Below are positions 6,863 through 56,844 of a stretch of 64,000 nucleotides of DNA, in pieces. The position numbers and the translations under genes are program-made. The first letter of the stretch is position 1; the number at the start of each line of letters is the position of its first letter. Under the pieces are notes generated by a model, which saw nothing but the letters and a program-made list of their open reading frames with translations, searched no databases and was not told where the DNA came from. This DNA comes from Podarcis muralis (Eukaryota): contig NC_135667.1 of assembly GCF_964188315.1 (NCBI RefSeq), forward strand, positions 11,594,001 to 11,658,000, in the 5' to 3' direction.

Positions 6863-7767
6863 TCATTTATACTTTTTTTGTGTCAGCTGCTGTCTGTTGT
6901 TAAGGTCAGGTCTCACCACAATAATGTAGCATTTTGGGAAAAAGAGGCAAGCCAGCAAGCCAGTACTGGAAGCCAAGATGGAGAAGATCTCCACAGCCAC
7001 CATGTATTTTCCTCTGGTGCTCAGGTAAGTTGGAATAAAGGAGAGCCAAACACTGCAAAAGACCAGCATGCTGAAGGTGATAAACTTAGCTTCATTGAAA
7101 CTGTCAGGCAACTTCCTGGCTAAGAAGGCCACTGTGAAGCTGACAGTGGCCAGGAAGCCCAGGTAACCCAAAACACAATAGAACATCAGGATTGACCCTT
7201 CATTGCATAACACTACAATTTCTTCATTCATTGAGTTTGTATCCAAATCTGGGAAAGGGGGAGAGGCTCCAAGCCAGAAGGCACAGATTCCTACTTGAAC
7301 CATAGAGGAGGAAAGGACAATGGAATAAGACAGTTCTTTTCCTACCCATTTCCTGATACTGGATCCTGGTTTGGTAGCCATGAATGCCAAAACCACTAGT
7401 ATGGTTTTGGCTAAGATACTAGAGAGGGCCACAGAGAAGACAATGCCAAAAGCGGTTTGTCGGAGAAGGCAGGTCACCTTATTAGGTTTTCCAATGAACA
7501 ACAAAGAACAGAGGAAACACAAGAGGAGGGAAATGAGGAGAATATAGGTGAGGCTTCTGTTGTTGGCTTTGACTATGGCTGTATCCCGATGCTTAATGAA
7601 GATGCTGAGCACCAGAATTGTGATCAGAGAGAATAGAAGTGCCGAGGTAGCTGAAACAATAGCCAAAGTTTCATGAAAAGCTAAGAAGTTTGGAATCTTA
7701 GAAATGCATAGATCCTGGTCTTTGTTTGGATATTGATCTGCTGGGCAACTGACACATGTTTCCATGT
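6863..7767 (-). CDS. V2R gene B exon 6 (end of cysteine-rich domain plus 7TM domain)
   Basis: ttttcag acceptor, phase 1; [50 protein letters not shown] class C 7TM motifs; TGA stop. Confidence 0.96.
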
Positions 7768-7909
7768 CTGAAAACAAACAAACAATGCATAACAATTTGA
7801 AGCAACCAATACTATTCTTAAGAATTTCCTCACCATTAGTCCATCTAGCATTGTATTTTCCATTTCAAAATGTTTCAAAACTTTCAGCCCCAATGCTTTT
7901 ACCCTGGAT

Positions 7910-13206: not shown

Positions 13207-14112
13207 ATCTGTGTCATCTAAAGTCTTGGAACCACAAGGGTCATCCAGTCCAACCCCCTGCAAAACAGGAAGCTCAAATAAAGCATCAGTGACAGATGGG
13301 CTATTTAACCTCTGCTTAAAAACCTCCAAGGAAGGAGAATCCATAACCACCCAAGGGATTCCATTCCACTGTTGAACAGCTGTGTCAGAAAGTTCTTCCT
13401 GATATTTAGTCAGAATTTTCTTTCTTGTATCGAGTCCTACCTCCAGAGCAGAAGAAACAAGTTTGCTCCATCTTCCATCTTGACAGCCTTTAAAATACTA
13501 GAAGATGGCTATCACATCTCCTCTCACTCTCCTCTTTTCCAGACTAAACGTATCCAGATCCTTCAACTCGTCTTCATAAGGCTGGGTTTAGAGACCCTTG
13601 ATCATCTTGGTTTCCCTTCTTTGCAAACATTCCAGCTTGTCAATAGCCCTCTTAAATTGTGGTGTTCAGAACTGGATACAATATTCCAGGTGTGGTCTGA
13701 CCAAGGCAGAATAGAGTGGTACCATTTCCCCCGCTTGACACTATACATCTGCTGATGTAGCCTAGAATAGCATCAGCCCCCCCCCCTACACCACACTGTT
13801 GAGTCATGTTATCCTTGTGGTCCACCAATATTCCTAGATCCTTTTCACATGTACTGCTAGTAAGCCAGGTGTCCCCCATCTTATATTTGTGCAACTGGTT
13901 CTTTATGCCTAAGTGCAGAACCTTACATTTGCCCCTGTTGAAACTCATTTTGTTAGTTTGGGCCCAGTTCTCCAATCTGTTAAGAACACATTGAATCTTG
14001 ATTCTGTCTTCTGTGGCATTAGCTACTTCTCCCAGATAGGTGTCATCTGCAAATTTGATGAGCATCCCCTTAATTCCTTCATCCAAGTCATTTATAAAGA
14101 CGTTGAACAACA
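13207..14112 (-). mobile_element. CR1 LINE 3' fragment
   Basis: LFNVFINDLDEGIKGMLIKFADDT...CKVLHLG...[10 protein letters not shown] is CR1 RT; CR1 3' UTR at ~13230-13270. Confidence 0.9.
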
Positions 14113-14321
14113 ACAGTATCCTGTGGCATCCCACTTGTCAATTTTTCCATTCGGTATATGTATTTTAAAAAATATCCTAATTCCCACATTTGTGACAAAC
14201 TTCCTAATTTTATTCTTTTATTTCTTTACTTATAATTGAATGCTAGCTCACATGACAAATCAGCACAGTGCACAACACTAAACAATTTGCAAAACGAATA
14301 CTTTGTAATAGGAAACCCTAC

Positions 14322-19100: not shown

Positions 19101-20002
19101 TTATATCTTTCTCCGTATCAATTGCTCTCTGTTGTTTAACTCAGGCCTCATCACAATAATGTAGCATTTAGGGGAAAAGATGCAAGCCAGTAATCCAGCA
19201 CTGGAAGCCAAGATGGAGAAGATCTCCACAGCCACCATGTATTTTCCTCTGGTGCTCAAGTATGTGGGAATAAAGGAGAGCCAAACACTGCAAAAGACCA
19301 GCATGCTGAAGGTGATGAACTTGGCTTCGTTGAAAGTGTCAGGCAACTTCCTGGCTAGGAAGGCCACCGTGAAGCTGACAATGGCCAGGAAACCCATATA
19401 ACCCAAGACACAGTAGAACATGAAGACTGACCCTTCATTACATAGAAATATAATTCCTTCCCTCATTGAGTGCATGTCCACATCGGGGAATGGAGAAGAG
19501 ATTGTCAGCCAGAGTGCACATATCACTACTTGAGTTTTAGAGCAGCAAAGGACTATGGAATAAGCCAGTCTTTTCCCCACCCATTTCCTGATAGAAGATC
19601 CTGGCTTAGTAGCCATGAATGCCAAAACCACTGATATAGTTTTGGCCAAGATGCTAGAGAGGGCCACAGAGAAGATGATGCCAAAAGCGGTTTGTCGGAG
19701 AAGGCAGGTCACCTTATTAGGTTTTCCAATGAACAACAAAGAACAGAGGAAACACAAGAGGAGGGAGATGAGGAGAATGTAGGTGAGGCTTCTGTTGTTG
19801 GCTTTGACTATGGCTGTATCCCGATGCTTAATGAAGATGCCCAGCACCAGAGCTGTGATCAGGGACAATAAAAGTGCAGTGGAAGTTGAAACAATGGCCA
19901 GCACATCATCAAAAGCTAAGAAGTTTGGTATCTTAGGAATACATAGATCCTGGCCTTTGTTTGGGTATAGATCCTTTGCACAACTTGCACAATTTTCTAA
20001 AT
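19101..20002 (-). CDS. V2R gene C exon 6 (7TM domain)
   Basis: Lies within ORF 19101..20081; acceptor before DLENCASC; class C 7TM motifs; TAA stop. Confidence 0.96.
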
Positions 20003-21429
20003 CTGAAAAGAAGTTAACAAAATATTGAACCAGAATAGTTCCGAATATTAAAATCTGTAGCAGCAGCAGTCCACCAAACATTATATTTCATCATGCAAAT
20101 TTTGACACCTTTCTGCCCAAGATGCCTACAAATCCTGCACATAGTCTGGAACTTTCAACAGAAGCAGCATGTGTGTCCTAGATGTACAAGCATTCCCTCA
20201 TAACCTGCTTTTAAATACGATAGGTTCTTTATTCCACATATTAACGAGGAATTACAGTTTGCATAATGAGTGCCATCCCACCAAATCATACTCAAAGTAG
20301 TCCCACTGAAATAAATAGACTTAAGTAATTTGAGGTTTTCCACTATGAAGTGGTTTATAAATTTTATGAAATAAATACATAAATTGATTTCAGTGGGTCG
20401 ATTCTGAGTATTACTATTGCCCAATAAGTTTTAATACTAGAAAATCCTGATCCCTTATTTTTTAATCCTGAATAATAACGGCATTTTTACTAGCCCTCTT
20501 GTTAATGCCATAAAATCTTTATGCGATGCTCATAGTGATTCTTATGCAATGACTGGTTTCTGTTTGTAATATTAATCCCTACATGTTGTACTAGTTTGGC
20601 TGATCTGTGCTGCATAAGTTTATTTTTTTATATAGATTCCCAATTTATCTCTACTTAGACTTTCATAACTTCTCATTCTTGTTTCATGGCAGATCACAAG
20701 CTGAAAGGAAGGACACAGCCAGCAACAGGGTCTACCATAACTTTTGTCTGGGTGCTCATCCCTTGTCAATATGTATCGAGTCTTGCCCATGTTTTGCATA
20801 ACACTGTGTCCCATGTGATTCTTCTCTCACATGCTTGGTCTGAATGATTTCAAAATAGCAATTCATTATCCTCCAAGTATAAGTCCGCTTTCTAGTGTAT
20901 TGAAATGTTCCAAAAATGTACAAGCATTCCTATGGTACTTGATATTTTGTCTTGGGCAAGCCTCCTTTTATCATCCTGAACAACTTTTGCAAAACTTGAA
21001 CTTTCTCTCTTTTATGTCTTCTTAACCCAAGTTCATCCTCAGTTGCTGGAAACTTCTTAAGTATCATAATTGCTTCTCAAGGTCCCCTTCCTCTTTGACA
21101 TTTGATCCTAGTAAGAATGTCTCCACTGCATGCATTTCTTTCTCTGGATCATAAGTGTTTTTCAGAATACTTTCTCATACACAAAGCAATTGATTTTTGC
21201 AATGTGTCTGAGACTTCAGCTAGAAGCTTTTCCATTATGGGTTGGATTGAGATTTATGGTTTATCCAAAATTCCTCTTCTCTCTCAATACCAGAAATTAA
21301 ATATACCATCAATGGAAGCTCCTTTTATGGATTCTAAATCTCAGGTTCAGCCATTATTACACTATGCTAACTGTGAATTTGTTTGTGTTAAAATGTATTA
21401 TATGCACAGTATTTTCCTGAAGATGACTA

Positions 21430-39076: not shown

Positions 39077-42000
39077 TAAGCTGATTTAAAGGTTGTAGGT
39101 TGTGTTTTATATAATATTGGTTTATTGAGATTGTATTTGCATATGGTGTATGTTTTTAAGCCCCCAAGAGAGGACATTGCCTGATAGAGCAGTATAAAAA
39201 GGTATAAAGAAATAAGGAATGACAACAAAATGTTAGCAGGGCCTAACATGTATTACAGAAAATAGATGTTTCCTGTCATTACTTTATGTGAGATTTATGA
39301 GTCAAGCCTTCAGTTTGTAACATTCAATGAAATGCAAATCTAGTTTTAATCCATTTATAAGACTGAGTATAGAACTTTGAATCTTTCTGAGTTTGAATAC
39401 AGAAGGAATGTGCCCCCTGTGTACTATTGCTTAAAGCATGATAAATATCAGATGGAAGAAGAATTCTACAAACTAATTAATACTAAACTCTTCCCTTAAC
39501 TTTATTCAATGTTAAATTTCCAATATCTTTGGATAGGTGCCACCCCTTTCAGAATGTAATGGCATCTGCCAACCTGGTTATGGGAAGAAAAAGAAAGAAG
39601 GAGAGAAATTTTGCTGCTATGATTGTGCTCCATGTCCAGATGGGATGGTCTCAAACGAGAAGGGTAGGACATGCTATTTCATGGTAGACCAGATTGCCCA
39701 AGTTTCTGAAGTAATATATGAGAGGCTGTTTTGCAAGTTTGTTATAATTAACTTGGCACATTTTTTAAAATTATGTTGTTGTACATTGTTCTCAGTGTTC
39801 ATTTAGGCCCCCAGTTGTAACAAACTAGGCAAGTGGGGAAAGGATGGGGTGGGTTCAACCCAAAAAATATTCTTAGGAATATCTATTTCTAGCTATTTTT
39901 TCATTGTTAGCTCAGTACCTTCCTATCCAGGACTTAGTGTGGCCTGGTTTGATGGCTGGAGAACTTGGAGGATAATGAATTGTTATTTTGAAATCATTCA
40001 GACCAAGCAAGTGAGAGAAGAATCGTAACCCGAGGTACCACTGTAATTATATAAAAATCACTACGAACATTCGCATAAAGATTTTATGGCTTTAACAAGA
40101 GCACTGGTAAAAATGCCGGTATTATTTAGGATTAAAAAATAAGGGATCAGGATTTTCTAGTATTAAAACTTATTGGGCAATAGTAATACTCAGAATTGAC
40201 CCACTGAAATCAATTTATGTATTTATTTCATAAAATTTATAAACCACTTCATAATGGAAAACCTCTAATTGGTTGACAAGTTGCTTAAGTCTATTTATTT
40301 CAGTGGGACTACCTTGAGTATGATTTGGTGGGATGGCACTCATTATACAAACTGTAATTGCTGATTAATATATGGAATAAAGAACCTGTGGTATTTAAAA
40401 GCAGGCTATGAGGGAATGCTTGTACATCTAGGACACACATGCTGCTTCTGTTGAAAATTCCAGGTTATGTGTAGGATTTGTACGAATCTTGGTCAGAAAG
40501 GTATCAAAAATTGCATGATGAGCTATAATGTTTGGTGGACTGCTGCTGCTACAGATTTTAATATTCGGAACTATTCTGGTTCAATATTTTGTTAACTTCT
40601 TTTCAGATTTAGAAAATTGTGCAAGTTGTGCAAAGGATCTATACCCAAACAAAGGCCGGGATCTATGCATTCCTAAGATACCAAACTTCTTAGCTTTTGA
40701 TGATGTGCTGGCCATTGTTTCAACTTCCACTGCACTTTTATTGTCCCTGATCACAGCTCTGGTGCTGGGCATCTTCATTAAGCATCGGGATACAGCCATA
40801 GTCAAAGCCAACAACAGAAGCCTCACCTACATTCTCCTCATCTCCCTCCTCGTGTGTTTCCTCTGTTCTTTGTTGTTCATTGGAAAACCTAATAAGGTGA
40901 CCTGCCTTCTCCGACAAACCGCTTTTGGCATCGTCTTCTCTATGGCCCTCTCTAGCATCTTGGCCAAAACTATATCAGTGGTTTTGGCATTCATGGCTAC
41001 TAAGCCAGGATCCTCTATCAGGAAATGGGTGGGGGAAAGACTGGCTTACTCCATAGTCCTTTCCTGCTCTAAAACTCAAGTAGTGATATGTGCACTCTGG
41101 CTGACAATCTCTCCTCCATTCCCAGATTTGGACATGCACTCAATGAAGGAAGGAATTATATTTCTGTGTAATGAAGGGTCAGTCCTCATGTTTTACTGTG
41201 TCTTGGGCTATATGGGTTTCCTGGCCATTGTCAGCTTCACGGTGGCCTTCTTAGCCAGGAAGTTGCCTGACAGTTTCAATGAAGCCAAGTTCATCACCTT
41301 CAGCATGTTGGTCTTCTGCAGCGTTTGGCTCTCCTTTATTCCAACTTACCTGAGCACCAGAGGAAAATACATGGTGGCTGTGGAGATCTTCTCCATCCTG
41401 GCTTCCAGTGCTGGATTACTGGCTTGCATCTTTTCCCCTAAATGCTATATTATTGTGATGAGGCCTGAGTTAAACAACAGAGAGCAATTGATACGGAGGA
41501 AGATATAAATGACAGAAGTTTTTGTTGGGTCTTAGGCTACCTGGCCTTGCTGACAATTAACAGTCTCATTGCACCTTTCCTAGTCAGGAAGTTGAAAAAA
41601 ATATAAATAATAGAAGGATTCATCATATCATTTATGTCCTTGTTATTCCATATAGGAACATGTGTCTTTTATATGAATTGGGACTGTGTGAAGGAATGAA
41701 ACTGTGGATAAGATCCAATATCACTTTCATAAGACATTTGTAGCAGATCAGTCTAGGCAATGGAAAAATTCTGGAGAGCTTCAAAATCATCTACACATAG
41801 GGTGAACTAGTACACCCTAATTACATTTCTTATCTGAGTTAAAGACTGGTGACAGGGAGCTTCTTAACCATGTCAGATTGCCTCAGATCAGATGTGTTGT
41901 TTCTAAAGTGATAAGACAATATTATCCAGTGTCCCTACCTCCTAATAACATTAGAACTCTGTCCAGAATTGTTTCCAGTAAGCAGTTAGTATGATAGCAA

Positions 42001-44170: not shown

Positions 44171-44386
44171 AGTTACAGATAGGTAGCCGTGTTGGTCTGC
44201 CATAGTCAAAACAAAAAAATTTCCTTCCAGTAGCACCTTAAAGACCAACTAAGTTAGTTCTTGGTATGAGCTTTCGTGTGCATGCACACTTGTATCTGAA
44301 GAAGTGTGCATGCACACGAAAGCTCATACCAAGAACTAACTTAGTTGGTCTTTAAGGTGCTACTGGAAGGAATTTTTTTTGTTTTG
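44171..44386. mobile_element. Penelope-like palindromic short insertion
   Basis: Long internal inverted repeat; 14-bp TSD AATATTAATGTTGT (44157-44170 and 44387-44400); same family as 54441-54682. Confidence 0.7.
44292..44329 (+). ncRNA. Minimal type I hammerhead ribozyme motif
   Basis: GUAU-CUGAAGA-A-GUGUGCAUGCACAC-GAAA-GC-UC-AUAC: core CUGANGA and GAAA, stem I GUAU/AUAC, stem II hairpin, palindromic AGCU stem III. Confidence 0.7.
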
Positions 44387-52095: not shown

Positions 52096-52248
52096 NNNNN
52101 NNNNNNNNNNNNNNNNNNNNNNNNNNNNNNNNNNNNNNNNNNNNNNNNNNNNNNNNNNNNNNNNNNNNNNNNNNNNNNNNNNNNNNNNNNNNNNNNNNNN
52201 NNNNNNNNNNNNNNNNNNNNNNNNNNNNNNNNNNNNNNNNNNNNNNNN
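52096..52248. other. Assembly gap (153 N)
   Basis: Run of N. Confidence 1.
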
Positions 52249-53717
52249 CTTTCAAAAACTATTTAAAGGAAATTGGAGTAGCAATCCTTGGCTCCCAGTT
52301 GGTACGAATCAGGTAGGAAAAAACTCTCAAGCTGTCAAGCAAATATTGGAGTGATACAACTTACCCTGTTCTCAATAAAAAGCCATCAGACCAGCTCATA
52401 CTGTGGCCTGGGTAGGCAGGTACTGAGCTAACAATGAAAGAAAGATCAGGACGAAAGGGGCATGCTTGTAAGCCACTCAATTCATCACCATCTACTCCTG
52501 TTTTGTACAGCGCCTGGCTGATCCTTCTTTTCATTTCCTCTACATAGGCTGAGCTGATCAAATAGTTCTGCCACCTGCTGTGATATGATGGGGAAACAGG
52601 ACATGCTTTATTAAGCAGATAGGCAGTTATTTTCATATCTTTGCTTTTAAAATGAAGTGTAAATGAAAGAATTTGTATGCATCATATTTCTGCTGTGTTT
52701 GTAAGACTGGGTGAAAATGAATCACTAGAATAATCCTTGGTTTTAAATTGCCATACATTGCAACCTTTTTCAGAAACTTGCATCCATTGCCCAAAAGATA
52801 AGCATTCGAACAAGGACCACAATCACTGCATCCCTAAGATCTCAAATTTCCTAGCCTTTGATGACACTTTGGCTATTGTTTCAACTTCCTCTGCACTTCT
52901 ATTGTCTCTGGTCACAGCTCTGGTGCTGGGCATCTTCATTAAGCACCGGGACACTGCCATAGTCAAAGCCAACAACAGAAGTCTAACATACATTCTCCTC
53001 ATCTCCCTCCTCTTGTGTTTCCTCTGCTCTTTGCTGTTCATTGGAATGCCTAATGAGGCAACTTGCCTTCTCCGACACACAAGTTTTGGCACCATCTTCT
53101 GTGTGGCCCTCTCTAGCATCTTGGCCAAAACCATTTCTGTCGTTTTGGCATTTATGGCTACCAAACCAGGATCCAGGATAAGGAATTGGATGGGGAAGAG
53201 ACTGACTTATTCCATTGTCCTTTCCTGCTCCATTGTTCAAGTAGGGAACTGCATTCTCTGGCTGGCAACCTCTCCCCCATTCCCAGATTTGGACATGCAC
53301 TCAATGACTGAACAAATTATACTGTTATGCAATGAAGGATCCATCACCATGTTCTATTCTGTGCTGGGCTACATGGGCTTCCTGGCCATTGTCAGCTTCA
53401 TTGTGGCCTTCCTAGCCAGAAAATTGCCTGGCAGTTTCAATGAAGCCAAGTTTATCACCTTCAGCATGCTGGTCTTTTGCAGTGTTTGGCTGTCCTTTGT
53501 TCCAACTTACTTAAGCACCAGAGGAAAATACATGGTGGCAGTGGAGATTTTCTCCATCTTGGCTTCCAGTTCTGGTTTACTGGGTTGCATCTTTTCCCCA
53601 AAATGTTACATAATTTTGGTGAAGCCTGAGCTCAACAACAGGGAACAGCTAATACGAAGAAAGTAGTAAATAAATTGATGAGTTTGTATTTTCAACAATG
53701 TTTTTATTATCTATATA

Positions 53718-54070
53718 GTGGCGCTGTGGGTAAAAGCCTCAGCGCCTAGGGCTTGCTGATCGAAAGGTCGGCGGTTCGAATCCCCGCGGCGGGGTGCGCT
53801 CCCGTTGTTCGGTCCCAGCGCCTGCCAACCTAGCAGTTCGAAAGCACCCCCGGGTGCAAGTAGATAAATAGGGACCGCTTTCTAGCGGGAAGGTAAACGG
53901 CGTTTCCGTGTGCGGCTCTGGCTCGCCAGAGCAGCAATGTCACGGTGGCCACGTGACCCGGAGGTGTCTCCGGACAGCGCTGGCCCCCGGCCTATAGAGT
54001 GAGATGGGCGCACAACCCTGGAGTCTGTCAAGACTGGCCCGTACGGGCACGGGTACCTTTACCTTTACCT
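53718..54070 (+). mobile_element. Sauria SINE just 3' of the gene E stop codon
   Basis: gtggcgctgtgggtaaaagcctcagcg...(ACCTTT)n. Confidence 0.88.
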
Positions 54071-54494
54071 TAGGATCATAAAAGAAGTATAAATGAATTG
54101 GGAGTATTAAACTATTTCAGTTATGTTGTTGCTTTGGAGGGTTAGGGTTGATTTATAGTCTGTAGAGCCTATGAGAGAAAAGTTCACAGGAGTAAAGTTC
54201 AACAAAGGATATTTAAATTTAAGGAAGAAATAGGAACCTAATAACCCTACTACCCTTCTAAATGAGTGAGACGCTGATTGATGGAGTAGACCTAAAGCAT
54301 TTAAGTAAAGATGGTAGATGGAGTTTTTCAGATAGTTAATGTTGATGTTACAGTGGATGCTCAGGCATCATTTCTTATGCATGGGATAAAGATTTGACTA
54401 TTGATTTCTTCTTATTCTATATTATAACTATTGATTTCTGAACAAAAAAAATTCCTTCCAGTAGCACCTTAAAGACCAACTAAGTTAGTTCTTG

Positions 54495-54532
54495 GTATGA
54501 GCTTTCGTGTGCATGCACACTTCTTCAGATAC
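54495..54532 (-). ncRNA. Minimal type I hammerhead ribozyme motif
   Basis: Reverse complement reads GUAUCUGAAGAAGUGUGCAUGCACACGAAAGCUCAUAC. Confidence 0.7.
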
Positions 54533-54549
54533 ACGCTTCTTCAGATGGT

Positions 54550-54587
54550 GTATCTGAAGAAGTGTGCATGCACACGAAAGCTCATAC
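54550..54587 (+). ncRNA. Minimal type I hammerhead ribozyme motif
   Basis: GUAUCUGAAGAAGUGUGCAUGCACACGAAAGCUCAUAC, identical to the other two copies. Confidence 0.7.
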
Positions 54588-54749
54588 CAAGAACTAACTT
54601 AGTTGGTCTTTAAGGTGCTACTGGAAGGATTTTTTTTTGTTTTGACTATGGCAGACCAACACGGCTACCTATCTGTAACTGGAACTATTGATTTCTGGTT
54701 ATTCTATTGAATATATTGGTTTTGGATATTTACATGTATGTTTCAAAGA

Positions 54750-54950
54750 AACAATTCATCTCATATTTGTCTCCAAGGAGCTCAAGGTGGCGTTCATAGT
54801 CCTCCCTCCCCCATTTAATTCCCACAGCAACTTTGTGAGACTGAGAGGCAGTGACTGGTCCAAGGTCAGCCAGTGAGTTCCATGACTGAGTGGAGATTTG
54901 AACCACGGGCTCCCTGGCATTAGTTCAACACTTTAACCACACTTTAACCA
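54750..54950 (-). mobile_element. Probable old tRNA-derived SINE remnant
   Basis: caaggtcagccagtgag...ggagatttgaaccacgg resembles the antisense of a B-box/core SINE head; family not determined. Confidence 0.4.
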
Positions 54951-55204
54951 ATACATCACATTGGCTTTCTAGTTATCACAAAGGAAATCTATCTTAATAT
55001 TCAGGCCTTAGCTACCAACTTTCACTCCAGCCTTGGGGCATTTGCCTCAGACTGCCATCATTAACCAACTTTCCTGAGTGATCTTATTTCTCCTAACTGC
55101 TGATTAACTCCCCTTCCTTCATTGACCAGAATCCCCAGCCAATCAGGACCTGTCATTCCCCATTAAAATGAATTCACCTGATCCAGTCCTCACATATAAA
55201 TACT

Positions 55205-56019: not shown

Positions 56020-56844
56020 AGAGAACTACCTTGACAGATTAGAGAACTGGGCCAAAACAAACAAGATGAACTTTAACAGGGAGAAATGTAAAGTATTGCA
56101 CTTGGGCAAAAAAAAATGAAAGGCACAAATACAAGATGGGGGACACCTGGCTTGAGAGCAGTACATGTGAAAAGGATCTAGGAATCTTGGTTGACCACAA
56201 ACTTGACATGAGCCAACAGTGTGACGCGGCAGCTAAAAAAGCCAATGCAATTCTGGGCTGCATCAATAGGAGTATAGCATCTAGATCAAGGGAAGTAATA
56301 GTGCCACTGTACTCTGCTCTGGTCAGACCTCACCTGGAGTACTGTGTCCAGTTCTGGGCACCACACTTCAAGAAGGACACTGACAAACTGGAACGTGTCC
56401 AGAGGAGGGCAACCAAAATGGTCAAAGGCCTGGAAACGATGCCTTATGAGGAACGGCTAAGGGAGCTGGGCATGTTTAGCCTGGAGAAGAGGAGGTTAAG
56501 GGGTGATATGATAGCCATGTTCAAATATATAAAAGGATGTCACATAGAGGAGGGAGAAAGGTTGTTTTCTGCTGCTCCAGAGAAGCGGACACGGAGCAAT
56601 GGATCCAAACTACAAGAAAGAAGATTCCGCCTAAACATTAGGAAGAACTTCCTGACAGTAAGAGCTGTTCGACAGTGGAATTTGCTGCCAAGGAGTGTTG
56701 TGGAGTCTCCGTCTTTGGAGGTCTTTAAGCAGAGGCTTGACAACCATATGTCAGGAGTGCTCTGATGGTGTTTCCTGCTTGGCAGGGGGTTGGACTCGAT
56801 GGCCCTTGTGGTCTCTTCCAACTCTATGATTCTATGATTCTATG
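56020..56844 (+). mobile_element. Young CR1 LINE 3' fragment
   Basis: ORF 56136..56765 ([12 protein letters not shown]...[13 protein letters not shown]) and an (ATTCTATG)n tail. Confidence 0.93.

What the first reader, a model, noticed from the sequence alone, without database searches (positions are those of the whole stretch)
54441..54682. Back-to-back pair of identical hammerhead ribozyme motifs, one per strand, downstream of gene E
This 242-bp insertion (15-bp TSD) is an inverted repeat in which both arms keep the complete 38-nt hammerhead (minus 54495-54532, plus 54550-54587 with predicted cut after C54583). A partial third core lies in the loop. Transcripts from either direction would carry a potential self-cleavage site, though long-range hairpin pairing would compete with ribozyme folding. 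It lies ~780 bp past the gene E stop, possibly in the 3' UTR. All three hammerhead copies in the window are identical, which indicates a young, recently active family.
Basis: partly seen in the sequence, partly recalled or inferred. Interest (0 to 1): 0.75.

Follow-up and report, generated by a model that had tools for sequence, protein, structure and literature searches.

The report
Inverted Penelope fragment with hammerhead motifs
This is a recent, not yet fixed insertion of two mirror-image end pieces of a Penelope-like jumping gene in a lizard genome, each carrying that element's small hammerhead ribozyme motif; it is a known by-product of how these elements insert, and nothing shows that it cuts RNA or affects the neighbouring receptor gene.

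Summary
Window 54441-54682 is a 242-bp insertion with a perfect 15-bp (possibly 16-bp) target-site duplication. It has two 94-nt arms that are 99% complementary, a 13-nt centre and a 41-nt extension at one end only. A complete 38-nt minimal type-I hammerhead lies on each strand (54550-54587 plus, 54495-54532 minus). A third identical copy lies at 44292-44329.

The motif shows every published hallmark of the Penelope-like-element (PLE) minimal hammerhead. No Rfam hammerhead model recognises it. The layout is the known PLE insertion signature: an inverted 5'-truncated pair, a one-sided tail of about 40 nt, and an AT-rich target with a duplication.

New here: a DNA contig from another individual carries the exact empty site, so the insertion is polymorphic and young.

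The functional suggestion is not supported:
- The hairpin (-183 kcal/mol) swamps the ribozyme fold (-6 kcal/mol).
- In either direction the ribozyme arm is transcribed after its perfect complement.
- These motifs are reported to need a second sense copy or the element's protein.
- AATAAA lies 3 nt after the gene's stop codon.
- Two RNA-seq runs give zero depth on the unique flanks, and family reads show no pile-up of ends.

The scan has already found this family many times elsewhere in this genome. I saw no autonomous partner in this window. Ordinary; low interest.

The parts
54426..54440 (.). Left copy of the target-site duplication, AACTATTGATTTCTG
   Evidence: (D1): 100% identical to 54683-54697. 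The empty-site contig in run X4 keeps a single copy (record 13).
54441..54534 (-). Left arm: antisense copy of the PLE terminal unit. It has no tail, and its outer end lies at the proximal end-point (...TTTTGTT).
   Evidence: (I1): 94 nt, 99% complementary to the right arm; aligns to copy 2.
54495..54532 (-). Minimal type-I hammerhead motif on the minus strand; predicted cut between 54499 and 54498
   Evidence: identical 38-mer that meets the descriptor.
54535..54547 (.). 13-nt centre (junction) of the palindrome. Together with 54529-54534 it forms a partial duplicate of the 5' half of the hammerhead core (minus strand).
   Evidence: D3, I2. Copy 2 has a different junction, 27 nt shorter.
54548..54641 (+). 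Right arm: sense copy of the PLE terminal unit
54550..54587 (+). Minimal type-I hammerhead motif on the plus strand. Helix I is GUAU/AUAC, followed by core CUGAAGA and bulge A. Helix II is GUGUG-CAUG-CACAC, followed by GAAA and the AGCU palindrome. C17 is C54583.
   Evidence: The features match PMC4209133.
54642..54682 (+). One-sided 41-nt 'tail' (AC-rich: ...GGCAGACCAACACGGCUACC...), present at the right end only
   Evidence: it lies outside the inverted repeat; the same tail lies at one end only of copy 2. PLE tails of 30-40 bp at one end are described in PMC8557442 and PMC11167929.
54683..54697 (.). Right copy of the target-site duplication
   Evidence: D1.
44171..44386 (-). Second, independent insertion of the same family (216 bp, own 14-bp duplication AATATTAATGTTGT). 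It has the same one-sided tail and only one complete hammerhead (44292-44329, plus strand).

Best explanation
The feature is a dead-on-arrival product of a Penelope-like retroelement (PLE) integration in a lacertid-type lizard genome, sitting in a vomeronasal type-2 receptor (V2R) gene cluster. It consists of two short, 5'-truncated cDNA copies of the element's hammerhead-bearing terminal unit, joined head to head.

Inferred mechanism:
1. The element's GIY-YIG endonuclease made nicks staggered by 15-16 bp in an AT-rich target.
2. Each 3' end primed reverse transcription at one of the element's two internal start sites on the RNA. One cDNA started at the distal site and includes the 41-nt tail. 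The other started at the proximal site and has no tail.
3. Both cDNAs ran back through the hammerhead and stopped about 35-50 nt beyond it.
4. They were joined by template switching or microhomology, which left the 13-nt centre with its partial core duplicate.
5. Repair of the staggered nicks produced the target-site duplication.

The hammerhead motifs are therefore passengers copied from the parent element, where the ribozyme lies in the pseudo-LTR. At this locus they are most likely inert, for four reasons:
- A read-through transcript would fold into a near-perfect 94-bp hairpin.
- The ribozyme arm is always made after its complement.
- This class of hammerhead is reported to need a second sense copy or the element's protein.
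- The site is probably beyond the gene's polyadenylation signal.

Shown here: the anatomy, the duplication, the motif features, the differing junctions, the empty allele and the lack of locus RNA in two runs. Inferred: dual-strand priming, the assignment of start sites and the inertness.
For: Anatomy.

Motif: searches show all core nucleotides present. The features that Cervera and de la Pena list as emerging beyond their descriptor are also present (PMC4209133). These are an unpaired base between positions 9 and 10.1, a G10.1-C11.1 pair, a long helix II, a short 4-bp helix I and a palindromic 15.2-16.2 (AGCU). The same paper reports dual minimal hammerheads on opposite strands 100-700 bp apart as truncated PLEs.

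Layout:
- PMC8557442 describes PLE insertions as strongly 5'-truncated. It adds that they often carry an adjacent inverted 5'-truncated copy, and a 30-40-bp tail at one end only.
- PMC11167929 shows that the Anolis PLE protein cleaves and extends both target strands. It prefers AT-rich DNA (ATT) and starts reverse transcription at two internal RNA sites whose interval is the tail. From its coordinates, the hammerhead cut lies at about nt 30 and the tail spans nt 85-119. That places the end-points about 55 and 89 nt past the cut, against 58 and 99 nt here.
- Both duplications in this window contain ATT.

Independent formation: the two window copies have different junctions. DNA contigs of two individuals show many different left-arm/right-arm joints (table 5).

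Youth: an empty site with a single copy of the duplication is seen in run X4, record 13.

Inertness:
- Fold energies.
- AATAAA at 53669.
- Zero RNA depth at 54121-54420 and 54961-55200 in two RNA runs.
- No place where molecules begin or end at a fifth of depth, among roughly 250-500 family reads per position (table 6).
- The non-palindromic tail bin has equal depth in both orientations (76/74 and 76/85). The neighbouring SINE shows a 2-3-fold strand bias in the same libraries.
Against: - No PLE open reading frame (reverse transcriptase plus GIY-YIG) lies in this window. Of the 18 ORFs of at least 140 aa, I Pfam-scanned 13. They are V2R exons, one CR1-type reverse-transcriptase fragment, or without a match.
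- I could not fetch an autonomous element carrying this exact leader, so descent from a PLE rests on architecture and on unchecked earlier notes of this scan.
- The sense unit has stops in all three frames, unlike the Anolis element, whose reading frame starts inside the hammerhead. The source may therefore be a non-coding leader or a non-autonomous derivative.
- Rfam hammerhead models give no match.
- Cleavage was not tested, and ordinary RNA-seq is a weak assay for it.
- Both window copies carry the tail on exactly one arm. Random, independent choice of start site does not predict that.
Confidence: 0.85

Rival explanations
1. A non-autonomous fold-back retroposon whose master copy is already palindromic. 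It would be transcribed and copied as a whole unit, like a hairpin SINE or retrozyme, rather than being formed anew at each integration.
For: Both window copies have nearly the same arm length, about 90-94 nt, and the same one-sided tail. The family is very abundant (depth). The sense unit is non-coding.
Against: The two copies differ by a 27-nt block exactly at the centre, and only one of them keeps both hammerheads. Contigs from two individuals show many different arm-to-arm joints (table 5). A reverse transcriptase would have to copy through a 94-bp perfect hairpin. There is no tandem hammerhead arrangement as in retrozymes.
Confidence: 0.08
2. A functional cis-acting ribozyme pair in the 3' UTR of the V2R gene, used to trim or regulate its mRNA.
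For: Complete core motifs lie on both strands, 775 bp past the stop codon, and the tail-bearing sense arm is in the same orientation as the gene.
Against: - The insertion is absent from another individual's haplotype, so it is not a conserved part of the gene.
- AATAAA lies 3 nt after the stop.
- RNA depth on the unique flanks is zero.
- The hairpin outcompetes the ribozyme fold by more than 170 kcal/mol.
- This hammerhead class was inactive as a single motif (PMC4209133).
Confidence: 0.02
3. The palindrome acts at the RNA level as a long hairpin precursor of small RNAs (endo-siRNA, piRNA or miRNA-like) that target the Penelope family. This does not exclude the best explanation of its origin.
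For: A near-perfect 94-bp hairpin with MFE -183 kcal/mol. Rfam miRNA-precursor models score it below threshold on both strands, for example MIR1222 at 69.8 bits against a gathering score of 90. Family RNA exists in both orientations.
Against: The miRNA matches are all below gathering score and are spread over unrelated families, which is what any long hairpin gives. This locus shows no transcription in two runs. No small-RNA data were available.
Confidence: 0.05
4. A miniature inverted-repeat DNA transposon (MITE) with long terminal inverted repeats.
For: Long inverted arms flanked by a direct duplication.
Against: The duplication length varies between copies (15-16 bp against 14 bp) and is longer than those of cut-and-paste families. 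One end carries a 41-nt extension outside the inverted repeat. The centre varies between copies while the ends are fixed. The arm contains a PLE-type hammerhead.
Confidence: 0.01

Closest known systems
Minimal hammerhead ribozymes of metazoan Penelope-like elements (Cervera and de la Pena 2014, PMC4209133)
   Same: Type-I topology and a full catalytic core. It also has an unpaired base between positions 9 and 10.1, a G10.1-C11.1 pair, a longer helix II, a 4-bp helix I and no real helix III, only a palindromic AGCU. It occurs as single motifs or as opposite-strand pairs in truncated PLE copies. Reptile genomes (turtle and snakes) were already reported to carry such motifs.
   Different: The two motifs here are only 17 nt apart, inside a perfect palindrome; the paper reports 100-700 bp. 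The sequence family is specific to this lizard lineage. Copies are nearly identical, like the D. virilis case, rather than highly variable.
Poseidon_Ac (PAc), the biochemically studied PLE of Anolis carolinensis (PMC11167929)
   Same: A squamate PLE with the hammerhead at the pseudo-LTR/ORF boundary. It has two insertion end-points downstream of the ribozyme that define a tail. From the paper's coordinates these lie about 55 and 89 nt past the cut (34-nt tail), against 58 and 99 nt here (41-nt tail). Its target is AT-rich, and both target strands are cleaved and extended in vitro. No RNA-seq reads end at the ribozyme cut site, in the paper or here.
   Different: By eye I saw no obvious sequence similarity to the PAc consensus; this was not computed. 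The PAc reading frame starts inside the hammerhead and stays open through the tail. Here the AUG in loop II is followed by a stop after nine codons, and all frames are closed.
Complex tandem or inverted PLE insertions with a one-sided tail (Craig et al. 2021, PMC8557442; Evgen'ev and Arkhipova 2005 as cited there)
   Same: Strong 5' truncation, an adjacent inverted 5'-truncated copy forming an inverted repeat, and a 30-40-bp tail at one end only.
   Different: This is an extreme miniature, about 100 and 135 nt, with no element body.
   Same: Both target strands serve as primers, giving an insertion with an inverted 5' part flanked by one duplication.
   Different: In L1 the inverted segment comes from a more 5' part of the RNA than the direct segment. 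Here both arms cover the same RNA segment, because PLE reverse transcription starts at fixed internal sites, and the product is therefore a palindrome.
Non-LTR retrozymes of animals (PMC7229834; bioRxiv 10.64898/2026.07.22.740005)
   Same: Type-I hammerheads of PLE ancestry carried in short non-coding repeats.
   Different: Retrozymes are tandem, same-strand repeats that give circular RNAs between two ribozyme cuts. Here the motifs lie on opposite strands, so no transcript holds two sense copies.

Membership tests
Hammerhead ribozyme (catalytic core) | Conserved core C3 U4 G5 A6 N7 G8 A9 ... G12 A13 A14, A15.1-U16.1 and H17 at the cleavage site | tested here: met
   Read directly from the sequence: CUGAAGA ... 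GAA A GC U C. The descriptor scan hits exactly three sites and none in 300 shuffles.
Hammerhead ribozyme (Rfam models RF00163, RF00008 and relatives) | Score at or above the family's gathering threshold with the covariance model | tested here: not met
   No hammerhead match at gathering score. None at E<=10 on 501 nt or on a 52-nt slice. This fits the absence of a real helix III, and the 2014 authors also had to write a relaxed minimal descriptor.
Hammerhead ribozyme | Site-specific self-cleavage giving 5'-OH and 2',3'-cyclic phosphate ends | tested here: inconclusive
   There is no bench test. Two RNA-seq runs show no pile-up of read starts or ends anywhere in the element at a fifth of depth (table 6). 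These reads come from other copies, and ordinary libraries are a weak assay.
PLE minimal hammerhead (Cervera and de la Pena 2014) | Unpaired nucleotide between 9 and 10.1, G10.1-C11.1, enlarged helix II, short helix I (4-5 bp), palindromic 15.2-16.2 with no or minimal loop 3 | tested here: met
   A54561 is the bulge and G54562-C54575 is the closing pair. The helix-II segment is a 14-nt palindrome, which folds as 5 bp plus a CAUG loop. Helix I is GUAU/AUAC and the palindrome is AGCU.
PLE minimal hammerhead | Compensatory variation in helices and conservation of the core across family copies | tested here: inconclusive
   The three window copies are identical. Of the best-supported variant sites shown by read laying, the four inside the element (54487, 54595, 54610, 54630) lie outside both hammerheads. 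However, 198 rows were not shown, and 0 of 4 is not significant.
Penelope-like element insertion | Target-site duplication of variable length in an AT-rich target | tested here: met
   15-16 bp here and 14 bp at copy 2. Both are AT-rich and contain ATT. The target preference is from PMC11167929.
Penelope-like element insertion | 5' truncation with an adjacent inverted 5'-truncated copy, and a 30-40-bp tail at one end only | tested here: met
   The arms are 94 nt and the 41-nt tail lies at one end in both window copies. The criterion is from PMC8557442.
Penelope-like element insertion | Sequence identity of the fragment to the pseudo-LTR/5' end of an element encoding reverse transcriptase plus GIY-YIG endonuclease | not testable with these tools
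   I saw no such reading frame in the window. No lizard DNA is held in the searchable collections: 0 hits in the metagenome, viral and prokaryote sets. Earlier scan notes s1-152546 and s1-152566 assert the link, but I did not check them.
Retrozyme (non-LTR, animal) | Two or more same-strand hammerheads in tandem delimiting a unit that can circularise | tested here: not met
   The two motifs lie on opposite strands, so each transcript holds one sense copy.
microRNA precursor families (MIR1222, mir-1684, mir-466 and others) | Score at or above the Rfam gathering threshold | tested here: not met
   The best score is 69.8 bits against a gathering score of 90. Hits occur on both strands and across unrelated families, which is generic long-hairpin behaviour.

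The most novel reading that the evidence does not exclude
These miniature palindromes would be an in vivo footprint of Penelope integration priming on both target strands, with the two strands using different fixed start sites (one tail-bearing, one not). Their read-through transcripts would form perfect hairpins that feed small-RNA silencing of the same family, so the element's own insertion mechanism would routinely create its repressors.
Probability: 0.1. Interest if true: 0.5.

Novelty: new member of a known kind. Interest (0 to 1): 0.2.

Why it matters
It matters little for ribozyme biology. The motif class, its home in Penelope-like elements, opposite-strand pairs, inverted truncated copies and the one-sided tail are all published. 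The scan has also met this family repeatedly in this genome.

Its modest value is threefold:
- The exact empty allele in another individual shows that the family was active recently in this lizard lineage. That makes the species usable for studying live Penelope transposition in a vertebrate.
- Such miniature head-to-head copies record both insertion end-points and the junction. A genome-wide census could test in vivo the two-strand, two-start-site model proposed from Anolis biochemistry.
- It warns against reading hammerhead motifs near genes as regulatory elements.

Tried and rejected
- Rfam covariance search for hammerheads: nothing at gathering score, nor at E<=10 on 501 nt or on 52 nt. 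Only sub-threshold miRNA-hairpin matches appeared, which I reject as generic hairpin behaviour.
- Search for more family copies outside the window. A 24-nt flank pattern and the 28-nt ribozyme pattern found nothing in metagenome contigs, viral contigs or prokaryote genomes. These collections hold no lizard DNA, so the blanks say nothing.
- Search for an autonomous Penelope partner in the window. Of the 18 ORFs of at least 140 aa, I Pfam-scanned 13. They are V2R exons, one CR1-type reverse-transcriptase fragment, or without a match. blastn finds only the two copies in the window.
- I did not use the published Anolis protein or consensus as a query, because that would have meant typing a long sequence.
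- Conservation of the core against the flanks across the family is inconclusive, because most variant rows were not shown and the tool is capped at one call.
- The energy of the trans-dimer hammerhead could not be evaluated with the nested-structure model. An intermolecular AGCU helix crosses both helix I closings. The unconstrained dimer MFE pairs the helix-II palindromes between molecules instead.
- The paper by Lunse et al. on dimer cleavage is not held. I used its summary in PMC6765202.
- MITE and regulatory-ribozyme readings were rejected; see the rival explanations.
- ARAGORN finds no tRNA in the neighbouring SINE.

Full report
**What is there**

Window 54441-54682 is a 242-bp block flanked by a perfect direct repeat, AACTATTGATTTCTG, at 54426-54440 and 54683-54697. 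The next base is G on both sides, so the duplication may be 16 bp.

The block has four parts:
- a left arm, 54441-54534;
- a 13-nt centre;
- a right arm, 54548-54641, which is 99% complementary to the left arm over 94 nt;
- a 41-nt extension, 54642-54682, that has no counterpart on the left.

The 38-mer GUAUCUGAAGAAGUGUGCAUGCACACGAAAGCUCAUAC occurs at 54550-54587 (+), 54495-54532 (-) and 44292-44329 (+), letter for letter. The centre holds a partial duplicate of the 5' half of the core: 54529-54544 against 54513-54528, 88%.

**Is it more than chance?**

A loose string pattern is not discriminating. It gives 14 hits against 6.6 expected. A descriptor that also demands the helices is discriminating. 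It requires a 4-bp helix I, a helix II of at least 4 bp closed by G-C, an optional bulge, a paired 15.2/16.2 and U-H. It hits exactly these three sites, and none in 300 dinucleotide-preserving shuffles of the window. The three hits belong to one repeat family, so this is one independent event. The weight of evidence comes from how well the motif fits a published class.

**What kind of hammerhead it is**

The motif reads as follows:
- helix I, GUAU/AUAC;
- core C3-A9, CUGAAGA;
- an unpaired A;
- helix II, G10.1...C11.1, a 14-nt palindrome that folds as 5 bp plus a CAUG loop;
- G12 A13 A14;
- A15.1 G15.2 C16.2 U16.1, then C17, with the cut after C54583.

There is no real helix III, only the self-complementary AGCU.

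Cervera and de la Pena described this architecture for metazoan Penelope-like elements (PLEs). Their list includes an enlarged helix II, a short helix I, an unpaired base between positions 9 and 10.1, a conserved G10.1-C11.1 pair and palindromic 15.2-16.2. They reported such motifs in reptiles. They also reported pairs on opposite strands 100-700 bp apart, which they read as truncated PLEs (PMC4209133).

Single motifs showed no cleavage in vitro. Dimeric constructs cleaved weakly (same paper; summarised in PMC6765202).

Rfam's hammerhead models do not see the motif at any threshold I could set. It meets the published minimal-motif definition but not Rfam family membership.

**What kind of insertion it is**

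A second copy lies at 44171-44386 on the other strand, with its own 14-bp duplication, AATATTAATGTTGT. Aligned to the first, it is 98-100% identical. The exception is a 27-nt block exactly at the centre, so only one of its arms keeps a complete hammerhead. It carries the same tail, again at one end only.

This combination is the insertion signature described for PLEs (PMC8557442):
- fixed outer ends;
- a variable centre;
- duplications of variable length in AT-rich DNA;
- an inverted 5'-truncated partner;
- a one-sided tail of about 40 nt.

Biochemistry of the Anolis element Poseidon_Ac supplies a mechanism (PMC11167929). The protein cleaves and extends both target strands and prefers ATT-containing AT-rich DNA. 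It starts reverse transcription at two internal RNA sites, and the interval between them is the tail.

From that paper's coordinates, the ribozyme cut is at about nt 30 and the tail spans nt 85-119. The end-points therefore lie about 55 and 89 nt past the cut. Here they lie 58 and 99 nt past it.

I therefore read the block as two cDNAs primed from the two nicked strands, one from each start site. Both were aborted just beyond the hammerhead and joined head to head. Because both cDNAs start at fixed sites on the same RNA segment, the product is a palindrome. L1 twin priming differs in that the inverted part comes from further 5' in the RNA. These mechanistic steps are inferred, not shown.

**Age and population status**

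I laid the contigs of two DNA runs and the raw reads of two RNA runs, all labelled as the same organism, on 53401-55200. In run X4, one 668-nt contig (record 13) runs 53586-53715, then 54071-54425, then 54683-54867 without any extra letters.

That contig is a haplotype lacking two things. One is the 355-bp SINE-like repeat at 53716-54070. The other is this insertion together with one copy of its duplication, which is the exact empty site. Its depth (13.4) equals that of neighbouring unique sequence (13-17), so that animal may be homozygous for the empty allele.

The insertion is therefore polymorphic. This fits the perfect duplication and the near-identity of the arms and copies. In run X11, contigs stop exactly at 54440 and start exactly at 54683. 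That is consistent with a branch between two alleles, but it does not prove one.

The contigs also show many different joins between left-arm positions 54483-54534 and right-arm positions 54548-54580 (table 5). These are other family copies with other centres, and they argue for formation anew at each integration.

Depth over the element is about 30,000-50,000 times that of unique sequence. The tool warns that this is not a copy number, so it only shows that the family is very abundant.

**Does it do anything here?**

The neighbouring gene is a V2R. Its 7tm_3 exon ends at 53666, with ANF_receptor exons upstream, and the window is a V2R cluster. Several observations bear on function:

- AATAAA lies at 53669-53674, 3 nt after the stop, and ATTAAA at 54106 also precedes the insert. 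The insertion is most likely intergenic.
- RNA depth is zero on the unique flanks (54121-54420 and 54961-55200) in both RNA runs. The gene's last exon is not detected either (0-3 reads, 53401-53700). These runs cannot measure the UTR; they only show no read-through in those samples.
- Reads on the element itself come from other copies; about 80% run on into unlike sequence. They show no place where molecules begin or end at a fifth of depth (table 6). The Anolis study reported the same negative result.
- In the non-palindromic tail bin, depth is equal in both orientations. The SINE next door shows a 2-3-fold strand bias in the same libraries. The family RNA therefore looks like passive read-through, not promoter-driven sense transcription.
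- A transcript of the locus folds into a near-perfect hairpin of -183 kcal/mol (+) or -180 kcal/mol (-). The hammerhead fold is worth -6 kcal/mol.
- In both directions the ribozyme-bearing arm is the second one made, after its perfect complement.
- A transcript contains only one sense copy, so the dimer that this class is reported to need cannot form in cis.

Together these make cleavage at this locus very unlikely, though it has not been disproved.

**What I could not do**

I could not tie the unit by sequence to an element encoding reverse transcriptase and GIY-YIG. I saw none in the window. The public collections open to me hold no lizard DNA. The sense unit is closed in all frames, unlike the Anolis leader.

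Earlier notes of this scan on other pieces of the same genome report three things:
- the same palindromic mini-insertions as Penelope end pairs (s1-152546, s1-152590);
- a not-yet-fixed copy in another V2R gene (s1-181792);
- an intact Penelope with its start codon inside the ribozyme (s1-152566).

They agree with my reading, which I had stated before seeing them. I treat them as leads. I tested only the architecture and the polymorphism, on this locus.

Conservation of the core relative to the flanks across the family also remains open. The four best-supported variant sites shown inside the element all lie outside the hammerheads, but most rows were hidden.

**Verdict**

The identification as a Penelope-type, hammerhead-bearing, young insertion is supported, and is extended by the empty allele. 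The suggestions of a working cleavage site and of a 3' UTR position are not supported. This is a new copy, and probably a lineage-specific family, of a well-described kind, and the scan has met it repeatedly in this genome. Interest is low.

Noticed in passing
window 53716-54070: A roughly 355-bp, very high-copy SINE-like repeat with a GGTTCGAATCC box-B-like motif, ending in TACCTTTACCTTTACCTT. It is absent from the same X4 contig that lacks the Penelope insert, so it is a second insertion polymorphism on this haplotype. RNA depth over it is about 1,500-2,700, with a 2-3-fold strand bias. ARAGORN calls no tRNA, and I found no clear duplication.
   Followed up: partly
window 53669-53674: A canonical AATAAA lies 3 nt after the V2R stop codon (53664-53666), which implies a very short 3' UTR.
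   Followed up: partly
window 6866-7795(-), 19104-20081(-), 40528-41505(+), 52737-53663(+): Four 7tm_3 exons, with ANF_receptor exons between them. The window is a cluster of vomeronasal type-2 receptor genes in both orientations.
   Followed up: partly
window 44171-44386: A second, independent insertion of the same Penelope-derived family, about 720 bp upstream of the same V2R gene. It lies in the opposite orientation, has a 14-bp duplication, and has only one complete hammerhead because its junction lies 27 nt differently.
   Followed up: yes
window 54396-54425 and 54426-54440 plus 54698-54712: The insertion target lies inside a local 30-bp tandem duplication (about 80% alike) that predates the insertion.
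   Followed up: no
window 13655-14134(-) and 56136-56765(+): CR1-type LINE fragments with the motifs FADDT and MGDTWL...[12 protein letters not shown]. The first gives a sub-threshold RVT_1 match; neither is a Penelope element.
   Followed up: partly
window 52096-52248: A run of 153 N inside the last intron of the V2R gene.
   Followed up: no
window 54630 and 54452: The single mismatch between the two arms lies at the edge of the T-run. At 54630, 55-84% of family RNA reads show A, where this right arm has T. This suggests a copying error or a later mutation in the right arm.
   Followed up: partly
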